From IMG/VR virus record IMGVR_UViG_3300042515_001753, positions 169,887 to 233,886 of that record: DNA of 64,000 nucleotides. The stretch is one strand, 5' to 3'. Shown piece by piece: positions 15,496 through 64,000 of this stretch. How positions within the stretch are numbered: the first letter of the stretch is position 1; each line of letters starts with the position of its first letter. The notes under the pieces were generated by a model. It searched no databases and had not been told where the DNA came from. It worked only from the letters and a program-made list of their open reading frames with translations. The translations under genes were made by a program, and so were the position numbers.

Positions 15496-15522
15496 TTTAT
15501 TATCTATAGACCTATTATGTTT

Positions 15523-15529
15523 TATTTAT
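15523..15529 (-). promoter_or_regulatory. Late promoter core ATAAATA
   Basis: TATTTAT on the plus strand ~28 nt upstream of the 1853-aa fibre start. Confidence 0.55.
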
Positions 15530-15834
15530 GAAGATAAGTCCTGCCGCAAAAACTCATAACCTTCATCTGGAAGGTCTTGGGGGTTTTCTAGGTCCATATC
15601 AAAAAGTAATGGGTGTGCTTCCTCGTCTATAAGATAGAATGAGTTTTTAAATAAATCATCTGGTTCAAATGCACGATACTTATCTGCCGTTCTACAGAGG
15701 TCTTCATCGTATAAGTGCCCATCAGGTAATTCATCGAAGGTAAATGGAATCTCGTTGATGAAGTACATTTTCACAATCATACTTCCGTTATTATACCAAC
15801 AATATGACTGACTTATTTTATACTTGAAAGACAT
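15526..15834 (-). CDS. Hypothetical acidic protein
   Basis: 102-aa ORF preceded by ATAAATA (plus strand TATTTAT 15855-15861). Confidence 0.7.
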   Translation of the reverse strand: MSFKYKISQSYCWYNNGSMIVKMYFINEIPFTFDELPDGHLYDEDLCRTADKYRAFEPDDLFKNSFYLIDEEAHPLLFDMDLENPQDLPDEGYEFLRQDLSS

Positions 15835-15857
15835 TTGAGTATCTCAATATCTTATAT

Positions 15858-16571
15858 TTATTTTAACCATTTACGAATAGAATTATCACTAACTCCATAT
15901 TTTTTACCTACAGCAAGATAAGAACTTTCTTTTACTTCTTGTAATAATTGTTCTTTAGAAGGTCTTTCAACTTTTCTTTGGGATTTTGAATAGCAACTAT
16001 TACAAAGACCAGTTTTGCAGTTTGTTTTCAATTCAACCCCACAAGAAGAACATTTATGAATTTTTTTGGTTAGTATTGTTTGGATTTTATTTTTTATTGT
16101 TTGTGAGTTTTTATTTTTCTTATTTTTACCACGATATGTTGGAGTTTTAGCGTGACAATTTGGGCATAAGATTTTTAAATTTTCTAATATATTGTTATAA
16201 TGGTCTCCATCAATATGATCTAATTCTAAAGGTATTGGTTCTTCTAACCATTCACTCAATCCGCAGCATTCACATCTATGATTCTTTAATCCCTCTATAA
16301 TTAATCTTTTTCGCAATTTGTTAGAATTGTACTCATAATTCTTAACAAGGATTTCACTTAATGGTGTTGTATTAAACTTATGAGTTTTTCCCTTTAGATG
16401 TCCTTGACCTGTAAAATGTGAAGTGTCTATTCCATAAAGTTTTTCAAATTTTTTAAATACTCTATAGTTTCCACCTCTTGGAGATAATCCAAGTTTTGTA
16501 AGTGCTTGTGCTATGGAATAACTTTCTTCTACTGCTTTTTTAAATTCTTCTATGCTATATGAATGTCTCAT
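15858..16571 (-). CDS. Free-standing HNH homing endonuclease with zinc-finger and C-terminal HTH-like segments
   Basis: CECC...LELDHIDGDHYNNILENLKILCPNCH (HNH core); second CxxC...CxxC; C-terminal YLAVGKKYGVSDNSIRKW helix-turn-helix-like segment. Confidence 0.9.
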   Translation of the reverse strand: MRHSYSIEEFKKAVEESYSIAQALTKLGLSPRGGNYRVFKKFEKLYGIDTSHFTGQGHLKGKTHKFNTTPLSEILVKNYEYNSNKLRKRLIIEGLKNHRCECCGLSEWLEEPIPLELDHIDGDHYNNILENLKILCPNCHAKTPTYRGKNKKNKNSQTIKNKIQTILTKKIHKCSSCGVELKTNCKTGLCNSCYSKSQRKVERPSKEQLLQEVKESSYLAVGKKYGVSDNSIRKWLK

Positions 16572-16614
16572 ACTGGTAAACTTATTGTATAGTTATTTAT
16601 ATAAGTTTACCAGT
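16572..16614 (-). promoter_or_regulatory. Perfect 14-bp hairpin enclosing late promoter TATAAATA and abutting the HNH start codon
   Basis: ACTGGTAAACTTAT (16572-16585) and ATAAGTTTACCAGT (16601-16614) are exact reverse complements; TATTTATA at 16594-16601; ATG at 16571-16569. Confidence 0.85.
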
Positions 16615-16617
16615 TCA

Positions 16618-16888
16618 TACCCGTGAGTGGATTCGAACCACCGCTTGAGAGATTTTCTTACCACTATAGTTTTCACTACCCTTTCGGTTTGTGGTCTGGA
16701 CTATACCTTCATCATACCTTTCGGTTTAGATGTTCCCCGTCTAGTCTCTACACCTTCATCTTACGATGCTTGGCTCGGTATTGCCATTTTACAGGTTTCA
16801 CCGAATTTGAGGAATTGCACTCATAAGGTTTCCCAAATGAGGCTCAATTTTCATAAGTCTCTTGCCTCTTCCGCTGGGCTACACGGGC
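16618..16888 (-). tRNA. trnL: tRNA-Leu(UAA), split by a group I intron (exon 1 16888-16855, exon 2 16656-16618)
   Basis: Joined exons GCCCGTGTAGCCCAGCGGAAGAGGCAAGAGACTT|AAAATCTCTCAAGCGGTGGTTCGAATCCACTCACGGGTA fold into a cloverleaf with stem AGAGA/TCTCT, loop CT-TAA-AA and T-loop TTCGAAT. CCA is not encoded. Confidence 0.9.
16657..16854 (-). ncRNA. Group I self-splicing intron (IC3-like, trnL type), 198 nt, no ORF
   Basis: 5' exon ends in U and intron ends in G; IGS ATTGAG; P element AAATTCGGTGAAA, Q AATACCGAGC, R GTAGAGACTAGA, S AAGGTATAGTCC; P3 TTCCTC/GGGGAA; P7 GACTA/TAGTC; GNRA-capped P2, P6a, P8 and P9 stems. Confidence 0.92.
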
Positions 16889-16902
16889 TTGTGTATGAGA
16901 CT

Positions 16903-16931
16903 ATTATAACTCAAAGAGTCCTAATAGTCAA
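16903..16931 (-). promoter_or_regulatory. Sigma70-type promoter TTGACT-17bp-TATAAT directly upstream of tRNA-Leu
   Basis: Plus strand ATTATA 16903-16908 and AGTCAA 16926-16931. Confidence 0.75.
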
Positions 16932-16932
16932 G

Positions 16933-17006
16933 TGCTCATTGTGGGAATCTAACCCACCTTCGGCGCTTTATGAGAACGCTGCATTCAAACAGATTGCTAA
17001 ATGAGC
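16933..17006 (-). tRNA. tRNA with CAU anticodon (Met, or Ile2 if lysidine-modified); non-canonical D and T loops
   Basis: GCTCATT/AATGAGC acceptor stem, GCGTT-CTCATAA-AGCGC anticodon arm, GTGGG-TTAGATT-CCCAC T arm. Confidence 0.8.
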
Positions 17007-17035
17007 ATTCGCTATTCGCAAATGACGAATAGCAA

Positions 17036-17123
17036 TACGAGTGCCTGGATTCGAACCAGGTCAAAGCCGCTAATCTGGCGGAAAGGCGTTATAAGTGCCC
17101 TCTGACTACCAAGTCTCACTCGC
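17036..17123 (-). tRNA. tRNA-Ile(UAU)-like, with long variable arm and very small D arm
   Basis: GCGAGTG/CACTCGT acceptor stem, GACT-TGGT-AGTC D hairpin, CT-TAT-AA loop, CCGC..GCGG variable stem, CCTGG-TTCGAAT-CCAGG T arm. Confidence 0.7.
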
Positions 17124-17171
17124 ATAAAAGTTGCCTTGAAGCAACATATAAGACCTATAAGTTGCCTTGAC

Positions 17172-17354
17172 TCAACAACCTTCTTCGTGGTCGGTGTGTA
17201 TTCGTATGAGGTCGTCTGCTTCTTTGTATTGTCTATAAGGAATCATCATAGCATCTCCGTGTTCGCTAGTAACAATAAAAGACTCTCCATTTTCCACTCT
17301 TTCTAGTAGATTATCAAAGTCTTCTTGAAATTCTTCTACCGTAAACTTTTCCAT
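17172..17354 (-). CDS. Phd/YefM antitoxin-like small protein
   Basis: MEKFTVEEFQEDFDNLLERVENGESFIVT..G.AMMIP resembles the Phd/YefM N-terminal pattern. Confidence 0.6.
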   Translation of the reverse strand: MEKFTVEEFQEDFDNLLERVENGESFIVTSEHGDAMMIPYRQYKEADDLIRIHTDHEEGC

Positions 17355-17357
17355 TTA

Positions 17358-17543
17358 TCAAAGAGGATTTGAGTATGCAAGACAATCATCACTTACCTGA
17401 GCACGAACCACTTCCAGTACATTCATAAACTGGTCTGGAGTTTCACAATTCACAACTCGTTCACCACCCTCACTCGAATACAGATAGAACTTACGAGCAA
17501 GCGTATCGACAACACAACGGGTCAGGGTCTCTTCGGCAGGCAT
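17358..17543 (-). CDS. Small hypothetical protein
   Basis: 61-aa ORF directly after a consensus promoter. Confidence 0.7.
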   Translation of the reverse strand: MPAEETLTRCVVDTLARKFYLYSSEGGERVVNCETPDQFMNVLEVVRAQVSDDCLAYSNPL

Positions 17544-17569
17544 CAGGCGTTTCGTTTGATTACCTAGGT

Positions 17570-17598
17570 ATTATAGGGCATCTGGGGGCAGGTGTCAA
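17570..17598 (-). promoter_or_regulatory. Consensus sigma70 promoter TTGACA-17bp-TATAAT driving the small-gene/tRNA operon
   Basis: Plus strand ATTATA 17570-17575 and TGTCAA 17593-17598. Confidence 0.85.
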
Positions 17599-17653
17599 GG
17601 GGTTTTGGGCACCAAATTGAGTTATAATACATAGTATAGAAAAAATAATAAGT

Positions 17654-18232
17654 ATGAGTGATTTTGTAAAAAAAGGTTGGTATTATCTTCCAAATATTAT
17701 TACCAAAGAAGAAGCAATACAAATCAAATATCAAAACTTATGTGGTGCTATAAATGATTTAGGTTCTTTAGAGGGACATTGGGACCCAGAAAGAGGTAGA
17801 GTTTTGACTTGTTATGCTCCACCTTCTTGCACCTTTGTAATGAAGAGAATTCAACCAGTTCTTGAAGATTTACTAGGTGAAGAACTCATTCCAACATATT
17901 GGTTCTCCACAACTTATCATAATGGTGGATGGATGAACTGCCATACTGATCGTCCTTCTTGTGAAGTATCAATCACTATGAATATCTGTGGTGATGCTTC
18001 TTGGCCAATTAAAATCAAAGACCTGACTGGTAAAACAATTAAAGCAGTTACACCAGTTGGAGATGGAGTTGCATACTTAGGAACACTTGTAGAGCACTGG
18101 AGAAGTCCTCTGAGAACTCACAATAATGATCGTTTTATGCAACTATTCCTACACTTTGTACGAAAGAATGGTCAGTACGTTGATTATGCTTATGATAAAA
18201 ATGAAAAATGCTATCAGTTACTCAACAGATAA
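17654..18232 (+). CDS. 2OG-Fe(II) oxygenase-like protein
   Basis: CHTDRPSCEVSIT ... GDGVAYLG...EHWR ... QLFLHFV; related to 59926-60579. Confidence 0.8.
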   Translation: MSDFVKKGWYYLPNIITKEEAIQIKYQNLCGAINDLGSLEGHWDPERGRVLTCYAPPSCTFVMKRIQPVLEDLLGEELIPTYWFSTTYHNGGWMNCHTDRPSCEVSITMNICGDASWPIKIKDLTGKTIKAVTPVGDGVAYLGTLVEHWRSPLRTHNNDRFMQLFLHFVRKNGQYVDYAYDKNEKCYQLLNR

Positions 18233-18748
18233 GGGGTCATTAATCATAGGAATCTGAGAAACTTCAGACCACCTATCATAAAGTCTTAAAACTTCTGAAT
18301 TGTCTTTTACAATTAGTGGTAATGGCGGAAATCCTTTGGGAAATGTTTGTGAAGAAGGAAGGTCTCTTAGTTCTTGTCTCCAGGTTTTAAAGTCAACGTC
18401 TAGTGATATTTCTTGTTCGGTTCCTTTAATTACAATCCAATCTGTAGTTGCAAGAATTTCATCACGAATTATACGAATTAAATCATATCTTTTCTTTTCT
18501 TCTCTTGAATCATAGAGATTTATTTCATTATCCCATTCTGATTGAGTCAATATCCAGAGTCCTTCTGTTGGATTTACAACAGTCTCATCAGGACAAGTAG
18601 ATAGTGAATATGGAACATTATTTTCATCTGTTAAGTCATAAATTCTTTCTAAACCTTCAATATTTGGAATCATATATCCTTGTGCTGGTGTTATCGCATA
18701 TTGACCAGTATCACGATTTATCCAATAGTGCTTAAGAAGTTTAGACAT
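18218..18748 (-). CDS. Tail fibre assembly chaperone-like protein
   Basis: C-terminal IRDEILATTDW...WRQELRDLP pattern typical of phage fibre-assembly proteins. Confidence 0.6.
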   Translation of the reverse strand: MSKLLKHYWINRDTGQYAITPAQGYMIPNIEGLERIYDLTDENNVPYSLSTCPDETVVNPTEGLWILTQSEWDNEINLYDSREEKKRYDLIRIIRDEILATTDWIVIKGTEQEISLDVDFKTWRQELRDLPSSQTFPKGFPPLPLIVKDNSEVLRLYDRWSEVSQIPMINDPLSVE

Positions 18749-18752
18749 ATCT

Positions 18753-19415
18753 CTAGTAAACTTTTATTCCATATTTATCTTCAAGTTCTTTATCTTGCTC
18801 TGCTTTGGTTTTAATTCCTTGTATAGTCATCCAATTTACCATAGCATAACGAGTTCCTGAAATGACTGGTTCTACCTGATGAAGATAATATTGTGTTGAT
18901 GGAAAAGCAATAAGAAGCCCTGGTTCTGGACGTACTCTAATTCTTAAATCTGGAAATACAAAGTCTCCTCCCTCAAACTCATCATTTAGAAAAAGAACCG
19001 TAGATAAATCTCGTTCAACAGATTTTTTCCAAATGATAGTTCCATCTGGATTTTTCCACTGTGCTACTGCATCATAATGAGGTTTATAGTGACCTCCTTG
19101 TTCATAGACAAGAAGTTGTGGAAGTTCACTATCTCTTATCTTGAAATCATAAAAAGGATTAATAACGTGATGAACTATATTATCATAAAGTTCCTTAATC
19201 TGTGGCAATATTTCTATTATATCTGCAGATTTTACATCTCTGGAAGACCTATCAACTTTTCCGGGATTATCATCAAAAGTTTTATTTGCTTTATCTGGAT
19301 CAAATACACCCATTTGTTCTTGTGAAGAATTATTTGCGTGATTGATTAGGAAATCAATTGCATCTGATGTAAGAACTTTTGGTTGTATTAAAATATTTGC
19401 AAGAGTGTCATTCAT
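18753..19415 (-). CDS. 2OG-Fe(II) oxygenase (prolyl-4-hydroxylase/PKHD-like)
   Basis: YKPHYD ... LSTVLFLNDEFEGGDFVF ... LHQVEPV.SGTRY. Confidence 0.88.
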   Translation of the reverse strand: MNDTLANILIQPKVLTSDAIDFLINHANNSSQEQMGVFDPDKANKTFDDNPGKVDRSSRDVKSADIIEILPQIKELYDNIVHHVINPFYDFKIRDSELPQLLVYEQGGHYKPHYDAVAQWKNPDGTIIWKKSVERDLSTVLFLNDEFEGGDFVFPDLRIRVRPEPGLLIAFPSTQYYLHQVEPVISGTRYAMVNWMTIQGIKTKAEQDKELEDKYGIKVY

Positions 19416-26399: not shown

Positions 26400-29300
26400 T
26401 TATACTATGTATTTACCGGAAACACAAACTGTTAAACTGTTAGTATAACTCGAAAATGCTCTGATCGTTTCTAAAATACCAAGTCTTGTTGGTCTTTCTA
26501 AAATTTCAACAATACTGTTTTTCGGAATAGTGAGATTACGAACTAGAAATCCAACTCTAACTCCAGAACTATTGAAGATAGAAATACTAGCATTAATATC
26601 TATGTTTAGATTATAATTACACAGACGAATTGATTGAATAACTGAAGGATATGTTGTAGATGTAAAAACTGTTTGAGTACCACTTAATATAATAGCACCA
26701 GTTCCAAAGAAATTAGTATCAGTTTTAGTTGAAAAAGTGATAAATGTACTTAGACCATTATTGATACCAATAGAAGAAGTGGTTGTACCATTTAGTGCCT
26801 GGAATCTCAAAATATCTGATGGTCCTGCAACCATTGGTTGTTGTATTAGTTCTACGGATCCTTCATAAGGAACAATTAATCTATTTGCTATAGGGACATT
26901 AGAACCACCACTAAAATCATGTCTAGCTGCTAAGTATAAGTCATCGGTGTAAATATTTGCAACGTAAATAGACTCAATTATATACCTACTACCAACAGTT
27001 GATGGAAATGTATAAATTGCTGTTGGTCCAGTAGTAATATCAGTTCCAGAACCTGCAGTTACATCAACAAATTCCCTGTTTGTAAGGTCAGTATTAAAAG
27101 CTCCAGATCCTCCACCACCGGCACCGCCGGAACTTCCTTGAACACCTTGATTACTTAAACCTTGAGTACCTTGAAGACCCTGAGTACCTTGACCGGCATT
27201 TTGTCCCGCTATTCCCTGAACACCTTGAGTTCCTTGGCGACCCTGAAGACCCTGAAGACCCTGAGTACCTTGACCGGCATTTTGTCCCGCTATTCCCTGA
27301 ACACCTTGAGTACCTTGAAGACCCTGAGTACCTTGACCGGCATTTTGTCCCGCTATTCCCTGAACACCTTGAGTTCCTTGGCGACCCTGAGTACCTTGAC
27401 CGGCATTTTGTCCCGCTATTCCCTGAACACCTTGAGGTCCTTGAGTACCTTGAAGACCCTGAGTACCTTGACCGGCATTTTGTCCCGCTATTCCCTGAAC
27501 ACCTTGAGTACCTTGAGTACCTTGAAGACCCTGAAGACCCTGAGTACCTTGACCGGCAGTTTGTCCCGCTATTCCCTGAACACCTTGAGTTCCTTGGCGA
27601 CCCTGAAGACCTTGAAGACCTTGAAGACCCTGAGTACCTTGACCGGCATTTGCACCTGAAGTTCCTTGAGTACCCTGACCTTGAGGTCCTTGAGTACCTT
27701 GAAGACCCTGAGTACCTTGACCGGCATTTTGTCCCGCTATTCCCTGAACACCTTGAGTACCTTGAGTACCTTGAAGACCCTGAGTACCTTGACCGGCATT
27801 TTGTCCCGCTATTCCCTGAAGACCCTGAGTTCCTTGGCGACCCTGAAGACCCTGAAGACCCTGAGTACCTTGACCGGCATTTTGTCCCGCTATTCCCTGA
27901 ACACCTTGAGTACCTTGAGTACCTTGAAGACCCTGAGTACCTTGAGTACCTTGACCGGCATTTTGTCCCGCTATTCCCTGAAGACCCTGAGTTCCTTGGC
28001 GACCCTGAAGACCCTGAAGACCCTGAGTGCCTTGAGTTCCTTGAGTACCCTGTGTACCTTGAGTGCCTTGAAGACCTTGAAGACCCTGAGTACCTTGACC
28101 GGCATTTTGTCCCGCTATTCCCTGAAGACCCTGAGTTCCTTGGCGACCCTGAAGACCCTGAAGACCCTGAGTGCCTTGAGTTCCTTGAGTACCCTGTGTA
28201 CCCTGTGTACCTTGAGTGCCTTGAAGACCTTGAAGACCCTGAGTACCTTGACCGGCATTTTGTCCCGCTATTCCCTGAAGACCCTGAGTTCCTTGGCGAC
28301 CCTGAAGACCCTGAAGACCCTGAGTGCCTTGAGTTCCTTGAGTACCCTGTGTACCCTGTGTACCTTGAGTGCCTTGAAGACCTTGTGAACCAGAAGTACC
28401 TTGAGTGCCTTGGCGACCTTGAAGACCCTGAGCACCCTGAAGACCCTGAGTGCCTTGAAGACCTTGAAGACCTTGAAGACCTTGAAGACCTTGAAGACCT
28501 TGAAGACCTTGAAGACCTTGAAGACCCTGAGTACCTTGAGTACCCTGAGTGCCTTGGAGACCTTGGGTTCCTTGAGTACCTGTACCTCCCGTTACTCCAG
28601 CAGTACCTTGAAGACCCTGAGTACCTTGAGTGCCTTGAAGACCCTGGGTTCCTTGAGTGCCTTGAAGACCTTGAGTACCTTGAAGACCCTGGTTCCCCTG
28701 AGTTCCTTGCGTACCTTGAGTACCTTGAGTTCCTTGGCGACCCTGAAGACCTTGAAGACCCTGAGTACCTTGACGACCTTGAGTTCCTTGGAGACCTTGA
28801 GTTCCTTGAAGACCTTGATTACCTTGAAGACCCTGAGTACCTTGAAGACCTTGAAGACCGGCGGCAAAGGAAGGAGTCCAACTTACGCCTATGCCAGTAG
28901 AAATCAATACAGATCCGGCAACACCTACATTATTATAAATGTCTCTAAGAGTTGAATCTAGTTCAATTCCCCCAGTAAAAATAGAATCTCCACCAACATT
29001 TAGATTTTTTTCAATTCCAACTCCACCTTCTGTAATAATTGATCCAGTATTTTTATCTGTAGATTCTGTTGGGTCGTTTACATAAATTGCATCATTAATT
29101 TGAGTTGTTCCAGCACTTGAGTCTAAAATCAGATTTCCAACATTTGTACTGACCGTGTTTGTATCAAGTTTAATATTATCAAATGTACCTACTCCAGTAA
29201 CATTTAGATTATTAACATTAACTTGAGAACTAAATGTGGAAACACCAGATACATTTAATCGATTGAGTGTGGTTGATTGGTAAACCTGAAGATTTTGAGT

Positions 29301-31072: not shown

Positions 31073-34003
31073 TTATCTCAGTGCAAGTATGAGTGGCGTA
31101 ACTTCTGCCTGTATTGCCTTACTAAAATCTCTTCCTCGTATTGTTGCTGATGGTTGATTAATTTGAAATCCCTCACCAATATCAAAATTACCTTTTTGAT
31201 CGGTACTTGTAAATGGAATTTGTGCTCCATCCAAGGCAACAACTTCATTTTCTTTAATAGAAACACCACCCTTAAATGGCGTTGATGTATTTATGTTAGT
31301 TCCAGTTCCAATATATTCAAAGGAATGAGAACTTGTAAGAATACGAGTAATCCTCTTTAATGATACTTCTTCTCCTCCAAATAATTCATATGGAATAAAT
31401 TGATTAAATGTGACGGTTGTAATTCCAGTAACGGAAGTTGTTTCCGTTGCAGAATCAATTGTAAAGTAAATCGGTTGAGTAACAATTGTCGCCGCTGCCC
31501 CTCCTGTACCATCAATAAAAACTTCTAAATTCTGCGTCGGTAAATAATTTCTTCCACTATTTACAACATCTATTGATATGATTGCTCCAGAAACTTCATC
31601 AACAGTCGGACTTAATTCTGCAATAATTCCTTGAGGACCTTTTGGTTGTTGAGATAGGTCACCAGAATCACGGATAATTATAGTTGGAGGATTTGCCGAA
31701 CTATATCCAGACCCGCCATTTGTAACCGTAATTGACTGTATTTGTATCATCGGTTCCTGAAGTATTCCACTTCCTTGAGCATCCGGATAATTATCTAAAT
31801 TAATCTCAAAGAAAAGTGCCTGACCATCATAAGGTCTTCTAACAAGATTAAGAGAGTCTTTCATATTAGCAAATGTAACTTTATCACTTCCGGCATCAAC
31901 ACCAGGTTGTGTTCTTGTTGGAGGAAATGTGCTTACAATTCCAGTAAATTCAGTACTACCTAATCCAACGGCAACCAATCCAAAATTACCAAAAGATGAG
32001 TTAGAATTAGTAAGGTCACAAGAACCACCACTGTCCGCATAAATTCCAATATCACAATTAATTGTAAAGATAGAAACTAACTGGGCATATCCATTATTTG
32101 TAATAGAAACTCCAATACCTGCCTCATTATATTGTGTAAATGAATCACAAACCATACACTTCAAATCGGCACCAATTGTCGATGCAGTTGCGTGATTACC
32201 ATCAATTTTCATACCAATACTTTTAGTCATAAAGTTGGTACAGTTTCTTATGTATGGACTTCTCCATCTTCCGCTTGGACCTTCATTTGCTGGTCCTGGG
32301 GCAATATAACCAGAAACTGCATAATTTGAAGGATTTGTAGGTGGAAATGCTACTGCACCGGCACCAGTATGAGCAATAGAAATATTAGAACCAGAAAAAT
32401 TTACATTTTCTATTAGACATCCTCGTCTTACGTGAAATACATCTTTAGTTACATTATTTGGAACAATAGTAACTAATCTTAAATCTTGCCCGGAAACTGA
32501 AACATCAGTTCTCAAACCAATTGGATTATCTTCAAAGTAAACACCGGAACGAACAAAAATTGTATCTCCATCTTGAGCAACAGATGCAGCTGCACCAATA
32601 GTTCTTTTAGAATCTCCTTCCAAATATCCAGTATTTAAATCATTTCCATCCATCGTAACCCAAATAGCATTTTGTGTCTGAACTCCCGGTGGTCTCCAAG
32701 ATACACCAGTTCCTACAGATGATAAGCGATAATCAAATTTTCCAGTTGCTGTACTATTATTGATATCAATAAGAGATGAATTTAGTTCTACAGTATTTTG
32801 AAATACTGATACTCCATCAACAGTTAGGGTACTAGCAAGTGTAGTAGCGCCGCCAACATTTAAGGTACTAGCAAGAGAAGTAGCACCGCCAACAATTAAT
32901 TGATTTCTTAAAGTTGCAATACCAATTACATCTAAGGTACTAGCAAGAGAAGTGGCACCACCAACATTTAATTGATTTCTTAAAGTTGTAATACCAATTA
33001 CATCTAGAGTATTATTAAGTGTGGTGGCACCATCAACATCTAAAGTATTATTAAGTGTAGTGGCACCATCAACATCTAAAGTACTATTAAGTGTGGTAGC
33101 AAGGTCAACATCCAGAGTATTATTAAGTGTGGTAGCAAGGTCAACATCCAGAGTATTATTAAGTGTAGTGGCACCATCAACATCTAAAGTACTATTAAGT
33201 GTGGTAGCAAGGTCAACATCCAGAGTATTATTAAGTGTAGTGGCACCATCAACATCTAAAGTACTATTAAGTGTGGTGGCAAGGTCAACATCCAGAGTAT
33301 TATTAAGTGTGGTAGCACCATCAACATCTAAAGTTAAATTTAAAGTAGTATCACCATCAACATTTAGAGTTGAATCAAAATCAACTGCTCCGGTTGCGTG
33401 GACTGTTCCAGTAATATCTAAAGTTGAGGATGGGACAGTTATTCCAATTCCAACGTTAGATATCCTGTAAATATCTGAACCAGATAAAGACCATCTATCA
33501 GAAATAACAATATTTGCAAAACTTGTATTAACACCAGAAATAGTAGCACTTACAAGATTATTTGGGTCGTTTCCATCAAGAAAATTTAGATTAGAAACTG
33601 TTCCTTGAAAGTTAGTCTCATCATATATTCCAATTGTTTGCAACGGAGTTCCAATTCCAGAGACATCACCCCAAAAAACACTATTACCATCACTTAAAAG
33701 AACTTGTCCCAGAGTTCCTTTATTTCTAAATTTATCTCGAAGAGGTCCGTCGAGATAAATGTCTTGATTAAATGTAGTAACACCAGAAATTAAAGCATTA
33801 CCAATTACTTCGAGTGCTCTTGATGGAGTTGTGGTTCCGATTCCAACTTTATCATATACAATTAAATTATCAGCGAGTAAATTAATTAAGTCCTGTGGTG
33901 GTTTATAAGTTTCACCAAAATCGGCATCCGGTTCGGGTACAAACTCTATTTCTGGAGAAACAAAATACTTTTTTGCGTAGGTGAAAGTACTAAATGCTGT
34001 CAT
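31073..34003 (-). CDS. Tail fibre/spike protein with 13-aa repeats and a pectate-lyase-like beta-helix region
   Basis: LNNTLDVDLATT repeats; IWVTMDGND...KRTIGAA..GDTIFVRSGVY; GGYSS.NPPT repeats. Confidence 0.75.
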   Translation of the reverse strand: MTAFSTFTYAKKYFVSPEIEFVPEPDADFGETYKPPQDLINLLADNLIVYDKVGIGTTTPSRALEVIGNALISGVTTFNQDIYLDGPLRDKFRNKGTLGQVLLSDGNSVFWGDVSGIGTPLQTIGIYDETNFQGTVSNLNFLDGNDPNNLVSATISGVNTSFANIVISDRWSLSGSDIYRISNVGIGITVPSSTLDITGTVHATGAVDFDSTLNVDGDTTLNLTLDVDGATTLNNTLDVDLATTLNSTLDVDGATTLNNTLDVDLATTLNSTLDVDGATTLNNTLDVDLATTLNNTLDVDLATTLNSTLDVDGATTLNNTLDVDGATTLNNTLDVIGITTLRNQLNVGGATSLASTLDVIGIATLRNQLIVGGATSLASTLNVGGATTLASTLTVDGVSVFQNTVELNSSLIDINNSTATGKFDYRLSSVGTGVSWRPPGVQTQNAIWVTMDGNDLNTGYLEGDSKRTIGAAASVAQDGDTIFVRSGVYFEDNPIGLRTDVSVSGQDLRLVTIVPNNVTKDVFHVRRGCLIENVNFSGSNISIAHTGAGAVAFPPTNPSNYAVSGYIAPGPANEGPSGRWRSPYIRNCTNFMTKSIGMKIDGNHATASTIGADLKCMVCDSFTQYNEAGIGVSITNNGYAQLVSIFTINCDIGIYADSGGSCDLTNSNSSFGNFGLVAVGLGSTEFTGIVSTFPPTRTQPGVDAGSDKVTFANMKDSLNLVRRPYDGQALFFEINLDNYPDAQGSGILQEPMIQIQSITVTNGGSGYSSANPPTIIIRDSGDLSQQPKGPQGIIAELSPTVDEVSGAIISIDVVNSGRNYLPTQNLEVFIDGTGGAAATIVTQPIYFTIDSATETTSVTGITTVTFNQFIPYELFGGEEVSLKRITRILTSSHSFEYIGTGTNINTSTPFKGGVSIKENEVVALDGAQIPFTSTDQKGNFDIGEGFQINQPSATIRGRDFSKAIQAEVTPLILALR
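33001..33370 (-). repeat. 39-bp (13-aa) tandem repeat
   Basis: Alternating LNNTLDVDLATT and LNSTLDVDGATT units, nearly identical at DNA level. Confidence 0.9.
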
Positions 34004-34718: not shown

Positions 34719-35297
34719 TTATCCTATCGCTCCGTATTTATTTGTGCCACCGGCATTAAAAGTTTCTGCAACATTATCATCACCACAGGGAGAACCAGCA
34801 GGAAATATTTTTTCTCCGCTAGAGGTTCCTTTAGGAGCGAGATTGCCAGTCTTTGCTATACAGTCCGCCTGATTTGATTGAGTTACAACACGAGAACCAG
34901 CCTTAATATTTACATTTTTACCTGCCGTCAGGTTAATGTTTTCATCGGCATCAAGAATTATATTTTTTGCTCGGATTCTAACATTACCATTTCTTTCTGC
35001 CGTGATTGTTATATCTCCATTCTTACCGGCAATTACAATATCTACTCCACCACCTGAATTATTTTGCCCCGCAACAATTTCTATTGAACGGTCATTATAA
35101 ATCTTAAAGAGACCGTTACCATTACTTAGACCGAGTGTATTAATATCCTTATCATCGGTAACTCCGTACATAGTATAAACATCTGGACCATCCAATCCCA
35201 ACTGCGGATTTTTAACATCTATTCCGAAGTTGGGTCCCAGTTTCCAATAACTTCTTTCTTCCCAGTTTGCCTCTCTAGCCATTTTTATACCACACAA
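34719..35297 (-). CDS. gp5 C-terminal beta-helix-like spike protein
   Basis: GDITITAE.NGNVRIRAKNIILDADENINLTAGKNVNIKAG repeats typical of gp5/VgrG needles. Confidence 0.6.
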   Translation of the reverse strand: MCGIKMAREANWEERSYWKLGPNFGIDVKNPQLGLDGPDVYTMYGVTDDKDINTLGLSNGNGLFKIYNDRSIEIVAGQNNSGGGVDIVIAGKNGDITITAERNGNVRIRAKNIILDADENINLTAGKNVNIKAGSRVVTQSNQADCIAKTGNLAPKGTSSGEKIFPAGSPCGDDNVAETFNAGGTNKYGAIG

Positions 35298-37390
35298 TCA
35301 ATAACTTGTTTTACTTCACCTTGGAATAAAGTTCTAAATCCAAATACTGGTTTTAATTTCGCTCCAGAACCAGTTTTACTTATCACTCTAATAATTGGCA
35401 AATCTGTAATATCAGTAATATTTATCGGAGTAATGCTAATGATCGATCCATTATCAATCACAACATCATATTCATTTCCAAAGTTGTCAGTTACAGTATC
35501 TCCGTCTTGATAATTATATCCAGGATTTTGAATTAAAACTTCAGAAATTGTGATGTTCTGTTGGTCCGTGAGTGTAATACCATCTCCAGCACCTCCAGTA
35601 CCACCAGCACCAGCAATATCACCTCCAGTACCACCAGCACCCCCAGTACCTGTACCAGTAATATCACCAACTTGTGGTTGATTTCCTAATGTATAACCTT
35701 CACCATCAGAATTGATTAAAATTGCGGTAACCTGCCCGTTCTCAATAACTGATTGAGCCACAGCACCATATCCTTTTCCACAATTATCAGTAATTGATAC
35801 AAATGGCGGATAGGCATAACCAGAACCTCCTGATGTAAGAATTGCACCAATAATACTTCCAGTACCTTCACTAATCGATCCAAAGATTGGAAGTGCCGAT
35901 GCTCCAGAACCACCGCCACCAAAAATATTAATAGATGGAGGATTACATACGGTTGGCGCTCCACCAAAACAATTACTCAATCCACCACCAATAAAGTCAG
36001 GGTCACTAATTTCTGGATTTAAGAAATCAAGAGGTCCTATAATACCTTCAATACCAGATAATCCAGATTCTGGGTCAGAAACAATAGCATTAGCATTATT
36101 TGCCAGTTCTAAAATATCATCTATATCAAATGGTGGGGATTGTGTTGGTCCAGAACCAATCGTCCATTTCTCAACACCCGGATCAGTTTCTTCTTCTCCG
36201 CAATTGAGTGATAATGGAATACCAAGAAGACCTTCTGCATTTTGTCGTATACTGCGTCCAAGATTAAAATTGCTAAAACTTAAGAGTAAAGAAAGAACTC
36301 CAAGAACTCCAGACATTCCTGCTATAATTAAATCAATAATTCCGTTGAGTAGTCCTCCGAGAAATTGATCGATAACACAAGACACAACATTCGTAACATT
36401 TTCTAATAACGCACAAACCATATCACTTATAAGACCTCCAAGACTTTCTATAATACTTGAAATCAAACAAGGAATTAGTTTTTGTAATTGTTTTACGGGT
36501 TCAATTGTTGCTTTCTGTGCTTCTACGCCTGCCAAATGTGCCGTGGATTTACTTTGAGTTGCCGCCTTTGTTGCGGAGTTTACCGTATCATATACTTGTT
36601 CTGCACCTTGCTGCAAAACCGGTTGCAATTCTTCGTAAGTACTATTAACAACTCCGGAAACTATTTCTGTGGTAATTCCTTGTATTTTTTGAGAGATTTG
36701 TTCGCACAATTCCTCAACTTTAATATCAATCCATTCTTGTGCCAGATTTGGAAATGATTTTAAGTCCTGCAGATACTTAATCGCATTTTCAAGTTCTGTG
36801 GAAATTTTTTCCATTTTTGACCCAGGTTTTGCAGTCCCGAGTTGAAGTGTGTCTCCAGTTCCACTAAACCAGGCAAGTTCGTTAATACCATTTGCGGTTT
36901 GTGGTGGTAGATAATATGGAGACTTTTGTGCTTCTGTTGTCTGTTCGTTTTGTTCGTTTTTCTTTATCCGGGAACCATCATTTGTAATTCGTGTGGTGTA
37001 TCCAGTAAATGGTATAAACGGGCTAACATAATCTTCACTTGGAACCTGACTTGTTTTTCCAAAACACCCAGAGATAACAGGGATTTGAGCGTTATCACCA
37101 TCCAGAAAAAATCCAAATACAATATCACTCGGTCTTACTTTATGGCTTGTTGCGTAGTTTGATGACCCGGTTCCATCTGATGTAGATAGAAGAACTTGAG
37201 CCCAAGGAAGGTCTTCATTTGGTAGTTCTGCGACACTATAAGGATGATATCCCATAATGCGAACTTTAAGTCTATTTCCCCATCCATCTTTATTGAGTTG
37301 CTTCTGAACTTCTTCCGGCGCAACCTGCCCTATCCACCAACGGAATCCGTCTCTTCCCAGAAAATTACTTTTGAGTAGTGATTCTTCCAT
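35285..37390 (-). CDS. gp5: Baseplate hub protein gp5 (N-terminal OB fold)
   Basis: GRDGFRWWIGQV ... RLKVRIMGYH ... DLPWAQV ... VFGFFLDGDNAQIPVISG matches the gp5 N-terminal domain. Confidence 0.8.
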   Translation of the reverse strand: MEESLLKSNFLGRDGFRWWIGQVAPEEVQKQLNKDGWGNRLKVRIMGYHPYSVAELPNEDLPWAQVLLSTSDGTGSSNYATSHKVRPSDIVFGFFLDGDNAQIPVISGCFGKTSQVPSEDYVSPFIPFTGYTTRITNDGSRIKKNEQNEQTTEAQKSPYYLPPQTANGINELAWFSGTGDTLQLGTAKPGSKMEKISTELENAIKYLQDLKSFPNLAQEWIDIKVEELCEQISQKIQGITTEIVSGVVNSTYEELQPVLQQGAEQVYDTVNSATKAATQSKSTAHLAGVEAQKATIEPVKQLQKLIPCLISSIIESLGGLISDMVCALLENVTNVVSCVIDQFLGGLLNGIIDLIIAGMSGVLGVLSLLLSFSNFNLGRSIRQNAEGLLGIPLSLNCGEEETDPGVEKWTIGSGPTQSPPFDIDDILELANNANAIVSDPESGLSGIEGIIGPLDFLNPEISDPDFIGGGLSNCFGGAPTVCNPPSINIFGGGGSGASALPIFGSISEGTGSIIGAILTSGGSGYAYPPFVSITDNCGKGYGAVAQSVIENGQVTAILINSDGEGYTLGNQPQVGDITGTGTGGAGGTGGDIAGAGGTGGAGDGITLTDQQNITISEVLIQNPGYNYQDGDTVTDNFGNEYDVVIDNGSIISITPINITDITDLPIIRVISKTGSGAKLKPVFGFRTLFQGEVKQVIDCVV

Positions 37391-63248: not shown

Positions 63249-64000
63249 TTAAGTTGATTTGTTTCTATTTATAATGCTGTATAAATTTTGAATTTGAACT
63301 TGTTGTTCTTTAATTGCTTCTATGAGTAATCCAACAAGATTTCCATAAGCAACTGATTTGTATCCATTACTTTCTATAACGAGGTCTGGATATACTGTTT
63401 CCAACTCTTGTGCAATCAAACCTATGGTGTGAACGTTAGTATCAATACGATCATATTCTACACCTCTAAGATTAATAACTTTTTCAAGTGCATTTTCAAT
63501 TGTATGAATATTAGTTTTTAGTCTTTCATCAGAGTTTGCAGTTATTGATCCACCAACTGTTAAGTCACCAGTGCTTGCATTAAATGTAAATGCCGTTGCT
63601 GTAGTTCTTACACTTGCGGTTTGGTTTGATCCTGCAGCAGCAACAAATACTGGATAAAATGTCGCATTTGTTGTTGTGTCTGTAGCATTAATAGTTGTTG
63701 ATGGTCCTGCCGATCCTTGAAGACCTTGAGTTCCTTGTGAACCTACCGTACCTTGTGAACCTACTGTACCTTGTGTCCCCTGAAGACCTTGACGACCTTG
63801 AAGACCTTGAAGACCTTGAGTTCCTTGTGAACCAACTGTACCTTGTGAACCTACTGTACCTTGTGAACCTACTGTACCTTGTGAACCTACCGTACCTTGA
63901 GTCCCCTGAAGACCCTGACGACCTTGAAGACCTTGAAGACCTTGAAGACCTTGAGTTCCTTGTGAACCTACCGTACCTTGTGAACCTACTGTACCTTGTG
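63249..64000 (-). CDS. C-terminal part of a second collagen-like tail fibre with peptidase S74-like chaperone (start outside window)
   Basis: QGTVGSQG / QGLQG repeats at ~63710-64000; ANSDERLKTNI ... AYGNLVGLLIEAIKEQQ; TAA at 63251-63249. Confidence 0.85.
   Translation of the reverse strand, partial: QGTVGSQGTVGSQGTQGLQGLQGLQGRQGLQGTQGTVGSQGTVGSQGTVGSQGTVGSQGTQGLQGLQGRQGLQGTQGTVGSQGTVGSQGTQGLQGSAGPSTTINATDTTTNATFYPVFVAAAGSNQTASVRTTATAFTFNASTGDLTVGGSITANSDERLKTNIHTIENALEKVINLRGVEYDRIDTNVHTIGLIAQELETVYPDLVIESNGYKSVAYGNLVGLLIEAIKEQQVQIQNLYSIINRNKST

What the first reader, a model, noticed from the sequence alone, without database searches (positions are those of the whole stretch)
16657..16854. 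Very compact (198-nt) group I intron in a phage tRNA anticodon
The insertion point (after U34 of UAA), the IGS (ATTGAG) and the P/Q/R/S cores match the cyanobacterial and plastid trnL(UAA) intron family. Peripheral stems are reduced to GNRA-capped hairpins (GAAA, GTAA), making it about as small as the Azoarcus tRNA-Ile ribozyme. Standard tRNA finders would probably miss or mis-call this gene. It implies transfer of the intron between host trnL and a phage tRNA, and is a candidate minimal ribozyme.
Basis: partly seen in the sequence, partly recalled or inferred. Interest (0 to 1): 0.8.

Follow-up and report, generated by a model that had tools for sequence, protein, structure and literature searches.

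The report
Self-splicing intron in cyanophage tRNA-Leu
A lake cyanophage carries a leucine tRNA gene interrupted in its anticodon by a real, very small (198-base) self-splicing group I intron; it belongs to a large family of such introns in phage tRNA genes that I found no paper describing, and it does not look like a recent copy of a cyanobacterial one.

Summary
On the minus strand, 16888-16618 is a tRNA(UAA) gene split after U34 by a 198-nt group I intron at exactly 16854-16657. Rfam Intron_gpI scores 64.4 bits (cut-off 50). ARAGORN in intron mode gives the same borders. One freshwater metatranscriptome contig is a perfect 198-nt circle joined at those two ends, so the RNA is cut out in nature.

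The intron belongs to the broad bacterial tRNA anticodon-loop (IC3-type) family, which occurs in many phyla, not only cyanobacteria. Its nearest relatives (94-97% identical) are all in viral contigs. Sampled cyanobacterial introns form a separate clade and match 73-77% of its bases. Two isolated cyanophages, S-SRM01 and S-CREM1, have the same tRNA without the intron. An HNH endonuclease gene sits just downstream, absent from a syntenic relative, and its homologues cluster beside or inside these introns. Phage-to-phage mobility is therefore the better reading.

The tRNA is also odd: 73 nt with no long variable arm, seen in 9 of 37 phage and 0 of 48 bacterial genes sampled.

This is a new member of a known kind in a setting that a 2014 review said was unknown. 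Ligated exons, in vitro splicing and endonuclease cleavage were not shown.

The parts
16855..16888 (-). 5' exon of the tRNA(UAA) gene: 34 nt, G1 at 16888, ending C32 U33 U34 at 16855
   Evidence: ARAGORN -i; sequence. An intron-less homologue in S-SRM01 matches 85%.
16657..16854 (-). Group I intron, 198 nt. A1 is at 16854 and the terminal G198 at 16657.
   Evidence: Rfam RF00028 64.4 bits; ARAGORN -i borders; 198-nt circular RNA contig in run X25; covariation over 112 introns.
16618..16656 (-). 3' exon, 39 nt: A35 A36, a 5-nt variable loop, the T arm, U72 pairing with G1, and discriminator A73 at 16618. No encoded CCA.
   Evidence: ARAGORN -i; alignment of mature tRNAs.
16843..16848 (-). Internal guide sequence (intron 7-12, AUUGAG). 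G10.U(-1), A11-U(-2) and G12-C(-3) form P1. U8 and U9 pair with intron A1 in P1 or with 3' exon A+1 A+2 in P10 (the P10 pairing is inferred).
   Evidence: cmscan alignment and direct reading.
16820..16841 (-). P2 hairpin (intron 14-35), 9 pairs including two U.U, with a GAAA loop
   Evidence: MFE fold; covariation, with up to 6 pair types per position.
16733..16814 (-). P3 (41-46 / 117-122), enclosing P4 (50-55 / 76-81), a stub of P5 (60-61 / 70-71, 8-nt loop), P6 and P6a (82-102, GUAA loop) and the 5' strand of P7 (107-113, A108 bulged)
   Evidence: Covariation: P3 paired in 105-110 of 112 sequences with 3-6 pair types per position. P4, P5 and P6a are likewise supported; MFE fold.
16711..16731 (-). 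P8 (124-144) with a GAAA loop and an internal loop, UCUAAA / UAUGA, that resembles the 11-nt GAAA-tetraloop receptor. It is the likely docking site of the P2 loop.
   Evidence: Pairs supported. The receptor reading is by eye against the canonical CCUAAG/UAUGG motif (own knowledge); relatives read CCUAAA/UAUGG.
16698..16703 (-). 3' strand of P7 (152-157), the pseudoknot partner of 107-113 and the guanosine-binding helix
   Evidence: Five of the six P7 positions keep essentially one pair type (one exception among 112 sequences). Position 113-152 shows four pair types.
16661..16694 (-). P9 (161-164 / 191-194) carrying two mini-hairpins: P9a (168-169 / 174-175, GAAA) and P9b (177-180 / 185-188, GAAA)
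   Evidence: P9b shows compensatory changes even against the 94%-identical L093 intron. MFE fold.
16903..16931 (-). Sigma-70-type promoter TTGACT-17-TATAAT. Its -10 hexamer ends 14 nt before tRNA position 1.
   Evidence: 11 of 12 matches. The same hexamers are readable upstream of the S-SRM01 homologue.
16572..16614 (-). 14-bp hairpin immediately after the tRNA. Its 3' arm abuts the ATG of the endonuclease gene. It is part of the insertion that relative L093 lacks.
   Evidence: Inverted repeat picked up as a spurious miRNA-like hit. The L093 alignment breaks at 16614.
15858..16571 (-). Free-standing HNH endonuclease gene (237 aa), a candidate homing enzyme for the intron or tRNA locus
   Evidence: phrog_10822 HNH endonuclease, E 5.3e-56. 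Weak Pfam HNH at residues 100-142 and HTH at 216-237. Absent from syntenic L093 and L017 and present in L109, L050 and L118. 32 of 36 homologues lie within 700 nt of the intron motif.

Best explanation
The window is part of a T4-like cyanomyovirus from lake water. In a small tRNA cluster (Ile-UAU-like, Met-CAU, Leu-UAA) it carries a tRNA(UAA) gene interrupted between U34 and A35 by a 198-nt ORF-less group I intron of the bacterial tRNA anticodon-loop (IC3) type.

Proposed mechanism:
- The gene is transcribed from its own sigma-70-type promoter.
- The intron folds into the standard P1-P10 core, held together by GAAA loops. L2 probably docks on a receptor-like loop in P8.
- External guanosine attacks after the U.G wobble that exon CUU forms with guide sequence GAG.
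- The freed 5' exon then attacks after the terminal G198. This ligates the exons into a 73-nt tRNA reading UUA/UUG, and the intron also ends up as a full-length 198-nt circle.
- The tRNA serves the AT-rich phage: 36.7% G+C, with UUA making up 30% of Leu codons.

At the DNA level the intron is a mobile element circulating among phages. It is present or absent at the same site in related phages. It sits in two unrelated tRNA-Leu(UAA) gene types. It is accompanied here by a free-standing HNH endonuclease gene of a family that elsewhere lies inside or next to these introns.

Shown: identity as a group I intron, the borders, the structure, excision and circle formation in nature, presence/absence polymorphism, phage-clade membership, and the association with the endonuclease family.

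Inferred: the order of the chemical steps, exon ligation, leucine charging of the short tRNA, and homing driven by the endonuclease.
For: - Identity and borders: Rfam Intron_gpI 64.4 bits, full-length match. ARAGORN -i gives tRNA-Leu(taa) with a 198-nt intron at 34/35.
- Structure: over 112 related introns, P3, P4, P5, P6a, P7, P8, P9 and P9b are paired in about 90-100% of sequences, with multiple compensatory pair types. The MFE fold reproduces every non-pseudoknot helix, z = -3.1.
- RNA: intron sequence is present in four metatranscriptomes. In X25 a contig of depth 36.6 with 0-1 mismatches is circular with period 198, joined at the predicted ends.
- Phage origin: DNA similarity to Synechococcus and Prochlorococcus myoviruses. 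Source runs are lake-water metagenomes.
- Relatives: introns 94-97% identical in syntenic viral contigs. The intron falls in phage-only clades with 100/99 and 96/94 support.
- Intron-less alleles of the same 73-nt tRNA in S-SRM01 and S-CREM1, scoring 56-59 bits on the Rfam tRNA model.
- Exon type changes 5 times on the intron tree, and a single clade for introns in short tRNAs is rejected, p 8e-63.
- Endonuclease.
- Promoter. Codon usage.
Against: - No contig or read with ligated exons of this exact tRNA was seen. Logan contigs are poor at capturing mature tRNAs.
- A full-length circle can also arise from the hydrolysis/circularisation side pathway, which leaves the exons unligated. The circle therefore proves cleavage at both sites, not ligation.
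- The circle contig differs from the window at one base, so it may come from a near-identical relative.
- The circle rests on one assembled contig in one run.
- The endonuclease is not strictly linked to the intron. L093 and L017 have the intron without it, and S-SRM01 has a different HNH gene nearby without the intron.
- The leucine identity of a tRNA without the long variable arm is untested.
- The phage and bacterial sets were fetched with different motifs. I controlled for this by keeping only sequences that hold both motifs.
Confidence: 0.88

Rival explanations
1. One reading: the phage captured the intron, or the whole gene, from its cyanobacterial host's trnL(UAA), so it is a member of the cyanobacterial/plastid intron lineage.
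For: The insertion site is the same, and the start of P1/P2 (UUGAGCCU) is shared with the cyanobacterial introns. The host range of the phage's relatives is Synechococcus/Prochlorococcus. Only about nine cyanobacterial introns, and no picocyanobacteria, were in my capped genome scan.
Against: Cyanobacterial introns form a separate, long-branched clade (100/100), while the window sits in phage-only clades. Only 73-77% of the window's bases match cyanobacterial introns, against 80-82% for other bacteria and 94-97% for phages. The 3' end (GUGGUAAG) and the P5, P7 and P9 regions follow the phage/proteobacterial pattern, not the cyanobacterial one (AGAAUG, extended P5). The exons are a short 73-nt tRNA, not the 84-88-nt class II tRNA-Leu of the cyanobacteria sampled.
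Confidence: 0.07
2. The intron is an inactive relic, and the interrupted gene is a tRNA pseudogene that yields no functional tRNA.
For: No ligated-exon RNA was seen. P1 has a U.U next to the splice site, and exon position -4 mismatches the guide. Full-length circles can form without exon ligation.
Against: All core helices are intact and evolve by compensatory change, even between 94-97%-identical copies. The exons are identical to those of L093 and remain a canonical cloverleaf. A precise 198-nt circle shows that both splice sites are reactive. The gene keeps a near-consensus promoter.
Confidence: 0.04
3. The spliced 73-nt tRNA(UAA) is not a leucine tRNA. Lacking the class II variable arm, it might be charged with another amino acid, or serve as a decoy or defence-evasion RNA.
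For: All 48 bacterial tRNA-Leu(UAA) genes sampled are 83-89 nt, while 9 of 37 phage ones are 73-75 nt. Phage tRNAs are known targets and counter-measures in tRNA-cleaving defence; for example, Septu is reported to cut the tRNA-Tyr variable loop (abstract of PMC13096335).
Against: The short tRNAs keep a Leu-like D arm (3-bp stem plus an N13.A22 mismatch, G18G19), and A73 is invariant. From my own knowledge, not tested here, E. coli LeuRS relies on A73 and tertiary structure rather than on the anticodon or the long arm. Heavy UUA use by the phage fits a Leu reader.
Confidence: 0.15
4. The circular RNA contig is an artefact, such as reverse-transcriptase template switching on abundant linear intron, a tandem DNA repeat or a de Bruijn graph quirk, rather than a true circle.
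For: It is a single contig in one run, held as Logan contigs rather than reads.
Against: Its length is exactly 198 + 30, as a closed unitig would give at k = 31 (the k value is my assumption). The junction falls at the independently predicted ends with no extra letters. Even template switching would need molecules ending precisely at both splice sites. No tandem copy exists in the window.
Confidence: 0.1

Closest known systems
Bacterial and plastid tRNA-Leu(UAA) group I intron (subgroup IC3), e.g. the cyanobacterial pre-tRNA-Leu introns
   Same: Identical insertion site (U34/A35), the same CUU/GAG P1 with a U.G wobble, the same P3-P9 core, and no ORF. The conserved stretches GGCAAUNCNGAGCCAAG and GGUGYAGAGACUNGACGG are shared.
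   Different: It lives in a phage. P5 is cut down to a 2-bp stub where the cyanobacterial introns have an extended P5. The P7/P9.0 and 3'-end sequences differ. It is 198 nt against 220-312 nt in the cyanobacteria sampled. The exons are a 73-nt tRNA without the long variable arm. It lies phylogenetically outside the cyanobacterial clade.
[quoted passage not shown]
   Same: A compact ORF-less intron in a tRNA anticodon loop, stabilised by GAAA tetraloops, that forms circles after splicing (PMC13168695). By my recollection of the Azoarcus sequence, not tested here, the J6/7-P7-P3 stretch is nearly the same.
   Different: Different tRNA and insertion position. It is 7 nt shorter. P9 here carries two mini-hairpins, and P5 has no 11-nt receptor.
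Cyanophage S-PM2 psbA group I intron with the adjacent free-standing endonuclease F-CphI (Zeng, Bonocora & Shub 2009, cited in PMC3037559)
   Same: A T4-like cyanophage, an ORF-less group I intron, and a separate endonuclease gene next door. This is the 'collaborative homing' layout.
   Different: That intron is in a protein-coding gene and, by my recollection, is of a different subgroup and its endonuclease of a different family. Here the host gene is a tRNA, and the endonuclease's target is untested.
Phage T4 SegB, a free-standing homing endonuclease in the tRNA gene cluster (PMC13096335)
   Same: An endonuclease gene embedded in a phage tRNA cluster. From my own knowledge, it promotes preferential inheritance of that region.
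   Different: SegB is GIY-YIG rather than HNH, and the T4 tRNA genes have no intron.

Membership tests
Group I intron (Rfam RF00028) | Covariance-model score at or above the curated gathering score, over the full model | tested here: met
   64.4 bits against 50, model positions 1-253, E 2.6e-15. The hit is lost by the speed filters when all 64 kb are searched.
Group I intron (Rfam RF00028) | Conserved core helices P3-P8 and P4-P6, with the P7 pseudoknot supported by covariation | tested here: met
   Pair counts over 112 introns. P7 is almost invariant, so only its last pair (113-152) gives covariation support.
Group I intron (Rfam RF00028) | A U.G wobble at the 5' splice site within P1, and a terminal G at the 3' end | tested here: met
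   U(-1).G10 in the cmscan alignment, and G198 as the last base.
Group I intron (Rfam RF00028) | Excision at the predicted sites in vivo | tested here: met
   A 198-nt circular RNA contig joined 16854|16657 in metatranscriptome X25. One contig, one run.
Group I intron (Rfam RF00028) | Protein-independent self-splicing with guanosine and Mg2+, giving ligated exons | not testable with these tools
   Needs an in vitro assay. No ligated-exon contig was seen.
tRNA-Leu(UAA) anticodon-loop intron family (IC3) | Insertion between U34 and A35 of a UAA anticodon | tested here: met
   ARAGORN reports 'gactt-Intron-aaaat'. The same junction occurs in 48 bacterial and 37 phage genes, the window's among them.
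tRNA-Leu(UAA) anticodon-loop intron family (IC3) | The host gene is a class II tRNA-Leu with a long variable arm | tested here: not met
   The mature tRNA is 73 nt with a 5-nt variable loop. All 48 bacterial hosts are 83-89 nt.
tRNA-Leu(UAA) anticodon-loop intron family (IC3) | Subgroup IC3 architecture | tested here: inconclusive
   The intron aligns throughout with bacterial tRNA introns, whose type the literature calls IC3 (title of a reference in PMC3984707). No subgroup-specific model was available.
   The cyanobacterial clade (100/100) is separate, and the window lies in phage-only clades. Cyanobacterial sampling was thin: five introns in the tree, none from picocyanobacteria.
Mobile group I intron with homing endonuclease | An endonuclease ORF inside the intron | tested here: not met
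   There is no ORF in the 198 nt. Homologues of the neighbouring HNH gene do lie inside related introns in other loci, e.g. L002.
Mobile group I intron with homing endonuclease | Intron-plus and intron-minus alleles of the same site in related genomes | tested here: met
   S-SRM01 and S-CREM1 carry the intron-less 73-nt tRNA. Intron relationships are decoupled from exon type.
Mobile group I intron with homing endonuclease | The endonuclease cleaves the intron-less allele near the insertion site | not testable with these tools
   Needs expression of ORF 15858-16571 and a cleavage assay on the S-SRM01-type tRNA gene.

The most novel reading that the evidence does not exclude
Phage tRNA genes are a large, essentially undescribed reservoir of minimal IC3 group I introns. 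More than 120 IMG/VR contigs hold one 16-nt motif, and the introns sit in Leu, Arg, Asn, Met and possibly other tRNAs (isotype labels other than Leu(UAA) are unchecked ARAGORN calls). They move between unrelated tRNA genes with the help of one HNH endonuclease family that exists both inside and beside the introns. If so, phages could be the vector behind the patchy distribution of the 'ancient' tRNA-Leu intron across bacterial phyla. In addition, a phage-specific tRNA-Leu without the variable arm may be an adaptation, for example to tRNA-cleaving host defences.
Probability: 0.4. Interest if true: 0.75.

Novelty: new member of a known kind. Interest (0 to 1): 0.62.

Why it matters
The tRNA-Leu(UAA) intron is the textbook 'oldest intron'. 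Whether its scattered distribution reflects ancient inheritance or lateral transfer has long been argued.

A 2014 review stated that every phage group I intron then known sat in a protein-coding gene, despite the many phage tRNA genes (PMC3984707). Here one sits in a phage tRNA, with RNA evidence of excision. The same family turns up in over a hundred viral contigs and in GenBank phages, where it is unannotated or labelled only as a long tRNA.

This has three consequences:
- It offers a concrete vector for lateral spread, and a natural series of very small ribozymes (178-212 nt) for structural and engineering work.
- It shows that routine pipelines (default ARAGORN, and Rfam at genome scale) miss both the tRNA and the intron, so phage tRNA inventories are undercounted.
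- The short tRNA-Leu lacking its variable arm raises a testable question about synthetase recognition, and possibly about evasion of host defences.

Tried and rejected
- Whole-window Rfam searches, in both gathering and E-value mode, found only tRNA-Met. The intron appears only when about 3.5 kb is searched. This is a filter effect, not absence.
- Default ARAGORN missed the gene.
- Pfam at E<0.01 gave nothing for the 237-aa ORF. PHROGs identified it as an HNH endonuclease. A PDB sequence search gave no meaningful hit.
- A megablast of 24 kb of the window against GenBank phages found no near-identical genome, so no depositor's annotation was available.
- Nine literature searches found no paper describing group I introns in phage tRNA genes. 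The library lacks most subscription journals, so this is not proof of absence. Al-Shayeb et al. 2020 does not contain the word 'intron'.
- I could not test picocyanobacterial hosts.
- I looked for ligated exons in four RNA runs and found none for this tRNA. A loose end in X15 at 16649 is an intron-less or spliced short tRNA of a relative with a different anticodon stem, so it is not evidence for this gene.
- The anticodon is UAA (reads UUA/UUG), not UUA, and nothing in this locus needed read-through.
- ARAGORN -i also called a 'tRNA-Phe' with a 91-nt intron at 36135-36319. It lies inside a 701-aa ORF, and I treat it as a false positive.

Full report
**Observation**

Reading the minus strand of 16560-17700 shows tRNA halves flanking about 200 nt of structured sequence. 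Default ARAGORN and the Rfam gathering-mode scan of the whole window reported only tRNA-Met(CAU) at 16932-17006(-).

A permissive Rfam scan of 15500-19000 gave Intron_gpI (RF00028) at 16864-16675(-). The score was 64.4 bits against a gathering score of 50, E 2.6e-15, covering the whole model.

ARAGORN run locally with its intron option called tRNA-Leu(taa) at c[16618,16888]. The mature tRNA is 73 nt, with a 198-nt intron between positions 34 and 35. Two core motifs each occur once in the window.

**Anatomy** (intron numbering; window coordinate = 16855 minus position)

- P1: exon C-U-U pairs with G12-A11-G10, with the U.G wobble at the splice site. Intron A1 pairs with U9.
- P10 (inferred): U8 and U9 can pair instead with the first two A of the 3' exon.
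- P2: 14-35, GAAA loop.
- P3: 41-46 / 117-122.
- P4: 50-55 / 76-81.
- P5: a stub, 60-61 / 70-71.
- P6 and P6a: 82-102, GUAA loop.
- P7: 107, 109-113 / 152-157, with A108 bulged.
- P8: 124-144, with a GAAA loop and an internal loop resembling the 11-nt tetraloop receptor.
- P9: 161-164 / 191-194, bearing two GAAA-capped mini-hairpins.
- Terminal G198.

The MFE fold recovers every helix that is not part of the pseudoknot (z = -3.1). In a MAFFT alignment of 112 distinct related introns, these helices are paired in about 90-100% of sequences, with several compensatory pair types at most positions. P9b changes compensatorily even between the window and the 94%-identical L093 copy.

**RNA evidence**

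The window's DNA is held by lake-water metagenomes. Many freshwater and marine metatranscriptomes hold 20-40% of the 31-mers of 16600-17010.

I laid the contigs of four RNA runs on 16300-17300. The intron is covered in all four. In X25, one 228-nt contig (depth 36.6, 0-1 mismatches) runs 16764-16853 and then continues at 16656-16793, listed as 'goes back 198' with one ambiguous letter. Its length of 198 + 30 is what a closed unitig would give at k = 31 (my assumption about the assembler). The junction can be read as 16854|16657, that is, the intron's last G joined to its first A: a full-length intron circle.

This fixes both borders independently and shows that both splice sites react in nature. 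It does not show exon ligation, and no ligated-exon contig of this tRNA was found.

**What the genome is**

DNA similarity is to T4-like cyanomyoviruses: S-SRM01, S-SKS1, P-SSM2 and others. The matching genes include tail fibre, baseplate and ferrochelatase genes. No near-identical genome is in the GenBank phage set. G+C is 36.7%. UUA makes up 30% of Leu codons and AUA 21% of Ile codons. This fits a phage tRNA cluster reading A/U-rich codons.

**Relatives**

ARAGORN -i found 78 intron-containing tRNA calls holding the motif, one of them the window's own. Of these, 37 are tRNA-Leu(UAA) genes split at U34/A35, again counting the window. The rest are labelled Arg(UCU/CCU), Asn, Met, Phe and others. 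Some isotype labels are ARAGORN mis-calls. I corrected nine 'Tyr(ata)' calls whose border was off by two.

In GenBank, a 735-kb huge phage (LR756501) has a class II tRNA-Leu(UAA) with a 205-nt intron. Microcoleus phage My-WqHQDG has an annotated 286-nt 'tRNA-Arg' that is an intron-bearing tRNA-Arg(CCU).

It gave 105 intron-tRNA calls, 48 of them tRNA-Leu(UAA) at the same site. They come from Pseudomonadota, Acidobacteriota, Bacteroidota, Chloroflexota, Vulcanimicrobiota and Cyanobacteriota. The family is therefore not specifically cyanobacterial.

**Placement**

The window's intron is 96-97% identical to introns in L017, L042, L092, L036, L081, L109, L076 and L117. It is 94% identical to L093. 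Most of these contigs are syntenic with the window: the same tRNA-Met and the same downstream large tail-fibre gene.

To remove the bias of using different fetch motifs, I kept only sequences holding both motifs, plus the cyanobacterial ones. In that tree the window lies in an 11-row phage-only clade (100/99) inside a 24-row phage-only clade (96/94). The five cyanobacterial introns form their own clade (100/100) on a branch of 0.86. Cyanobacterial introns match 73-77% of the window's bases, and the best other bacteria match 80-82%.

Picocyanobacteria were not sampled.

**The exons**

The spliced tRNA is 73 nt with a 5-nt variable loop, a G1.U72 pair and A73. Related viral contigs show two exon families carrying the same intron:
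- ordinary class II tRNA-Leu, 82-88 nt;
- a short 73-75-nt family: the window, L093, L072, L018, L020/L039/L110, L057 and L049.

The short family keeps a Leu-like D arm (3-bp stem, an N13.A22 mismatch, G18G19) and an invariant A73.

Isolated phages S-SRM01 and S-CREM1 carry this short tRNA without an intron. In S-SRM01 the gene is unannotated, and S-CREM1 annotates it as tRNA-Leu. These copies score 56-59 bits on the Rfam tRNA model. Short forms were 9 of 37 in phages and 0 of 48 in bacteria.

On a tree of the 40 phage introns labelled Leu(taa), exon type changes five times, and holding the short-tRNA introns together is rejected (delta lnL 118, AU p 8e-63). I read this as the intron moving between two gene types that share only the target ...ACUU|AAAAUC....

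**Mobility context**

The ORF at 15858-16571(-), 47 nt downstream of the tRNA, matches the HNH endonuclease phrog_10822 at E 5.3e-56. Pfam matches to HNH and a C-terminal HTH are weak.

Compared with L093, the stretch of about 750 bp from 16613 to 15865 (a 14-bp hairpin plus this ORF) is an insertion. L017 lacks it as well, while L109, L050 and L118 have it. By tblastn, homologues occur in 36 of 125 viral loci. Thirty-two of them lie within 700 nt of the intron motif. Some are inside the intron, as in L002 from a 595-kb phage. Others are free-standing just downstream of the tRNA.

This is the layout described for the cyanophage psbA intron and F-CphI. Cleavage specificity was not tested here.

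**Expression signals**

TTGACT-17-TATAAT at 16931-16903(-) lies just upstream of the tRNA. The same hexamers can be read upstream of the S-SRM01 homologue.

**Literature**

Hausner, Hafez and Edgell (2014) state that all phage group I introns then observed were in protein-coding genes, despite many phage tRNA genes (PMC3984707). Nine searches of the held library found nothing later that describes phage tRNA group I introns. The library is incomplete. The Azoarcus intron is given as 205 nt and forms circles (PMC13168695).

**Verdict**

The element is a known kind of ribozyme, an IC3-type tRNA-Leu(UAA) group I intron, in a setting not described in the literature I could search. It has in-nature RNA support and a clear population of phage relatives.

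What remains inferred: exon ligation, leucine charging of the short tRNA, and endonuclease-driven homing.

Noticed in passing
window 17036-17123 (-): An 88-nt tRNA-like gene with anticodon loop CUUAUAA (UAU, Ile) and a long extra arm (UUCCGCCAGAUUAGCGGCUU). Neither ARAGORN nor Rfam calls it here, probably because of an A31.C39 mismatch. ARAGORN calls its 90-92-nt homologues tRNA-Ile(tat) in S-SRM01 (L244 644-733) and L042. The anticodon stem differs from S-SRM01 by compensatory changes. An RNA contig in X15 covers 17036-17129. L093, L017 and L050 have an ordinary 72-75-nt tRNA-Ile(UAU) at this position. A class II-shaped tRNA-Ile is unusual.
   Followed up: partly
window 15858-16614 (-): An HNH endonuclease gene plus a 14-bp hairpin whose 3' arm abuts the ATG. 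Together they form an insertion of about 750 bp relative to L093. The hairpin could mask the ribosome-binding site or end the tRNA transcript.
   Followed up: partly
L244 (NC_070963.1, record positions 32943-33676): In the RefSeq record of Synechococcus phage S-SRM01, this stretch has no tRNA features. ARAGORN finds three tRNAs there (Ile-UAU-like, Met-CAU, short Leu-UAA), and Rfam confirms two.
   Followed up: yes
window 1-64000: Rfam misses a 64-bit group I intron when all 64 kb are searched, in both gathering and E-value mode, and finds it only in a 3.5-kb sub-search. Genome-scale annotation will therefore undercount this intron family.
   Followed up: yes
L049 1992-2244; L059; L141: ARAGORN calls even smaller relatives: 178 nt in a short tRNA-Leu(UAA) of a viral contig, 185 nt in a viral tRNA-Met(CAU), and 193 nt in a Magnetovibrio tRNA-Thr. 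In the alignment the 178-nt copy has a much-reduced P8 region. The L049 and L059 borders were not checked beyond ARAGORN and the alignment.
   Followed up: partly
L047, L105 (IMG/VR contigs): ARAGORN labels two intron-containing genes 'tRNA-Stop (tta)'. These could be ochre-suppressor tRNAs interrupted by group I introns. The borders are unverified and may be mis-placed.
   Followed up: no
L003 (OR578706.1, record positions 84823-85108): Microcoleus phage My-WqHQDG has an annotated 286-nt 'tRNA-Arg'. It is a tRNA-Arg(CCU) with an intron of about 213 nt related to this family. Rfam did not score it at E<0.01 in my search.
   Followed up: partly
window 17172-17598 (-): A perfect sigma-70 consensus promoter (TTGACA-17-TATAAT, 17598-17570) lies upstream of two small ORFs: DUF7294 (17358-17543) and a Phd/YefM-like antitoxin (17172-17354, below the Pfam cut-off). 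S-CREM1 also has a YefM-like gene just upstream of its short tRNA-Leu.
   Followed up: no
window 27134-28854 and 63700-63998: These stretches gave many overlapping, staggered blastn matches to L076 4860-6180. This indicates an internally repetitive coding region, probably fibre-like repeats.
   Followed up: no
window 36135-36319 (-): ARAGORN -i calls a tRNA-Phe with a 91-nt intron inside a 701-aa ORF (35285-37390). It is most likely a false positive of intron mode.
   Followed up: partly
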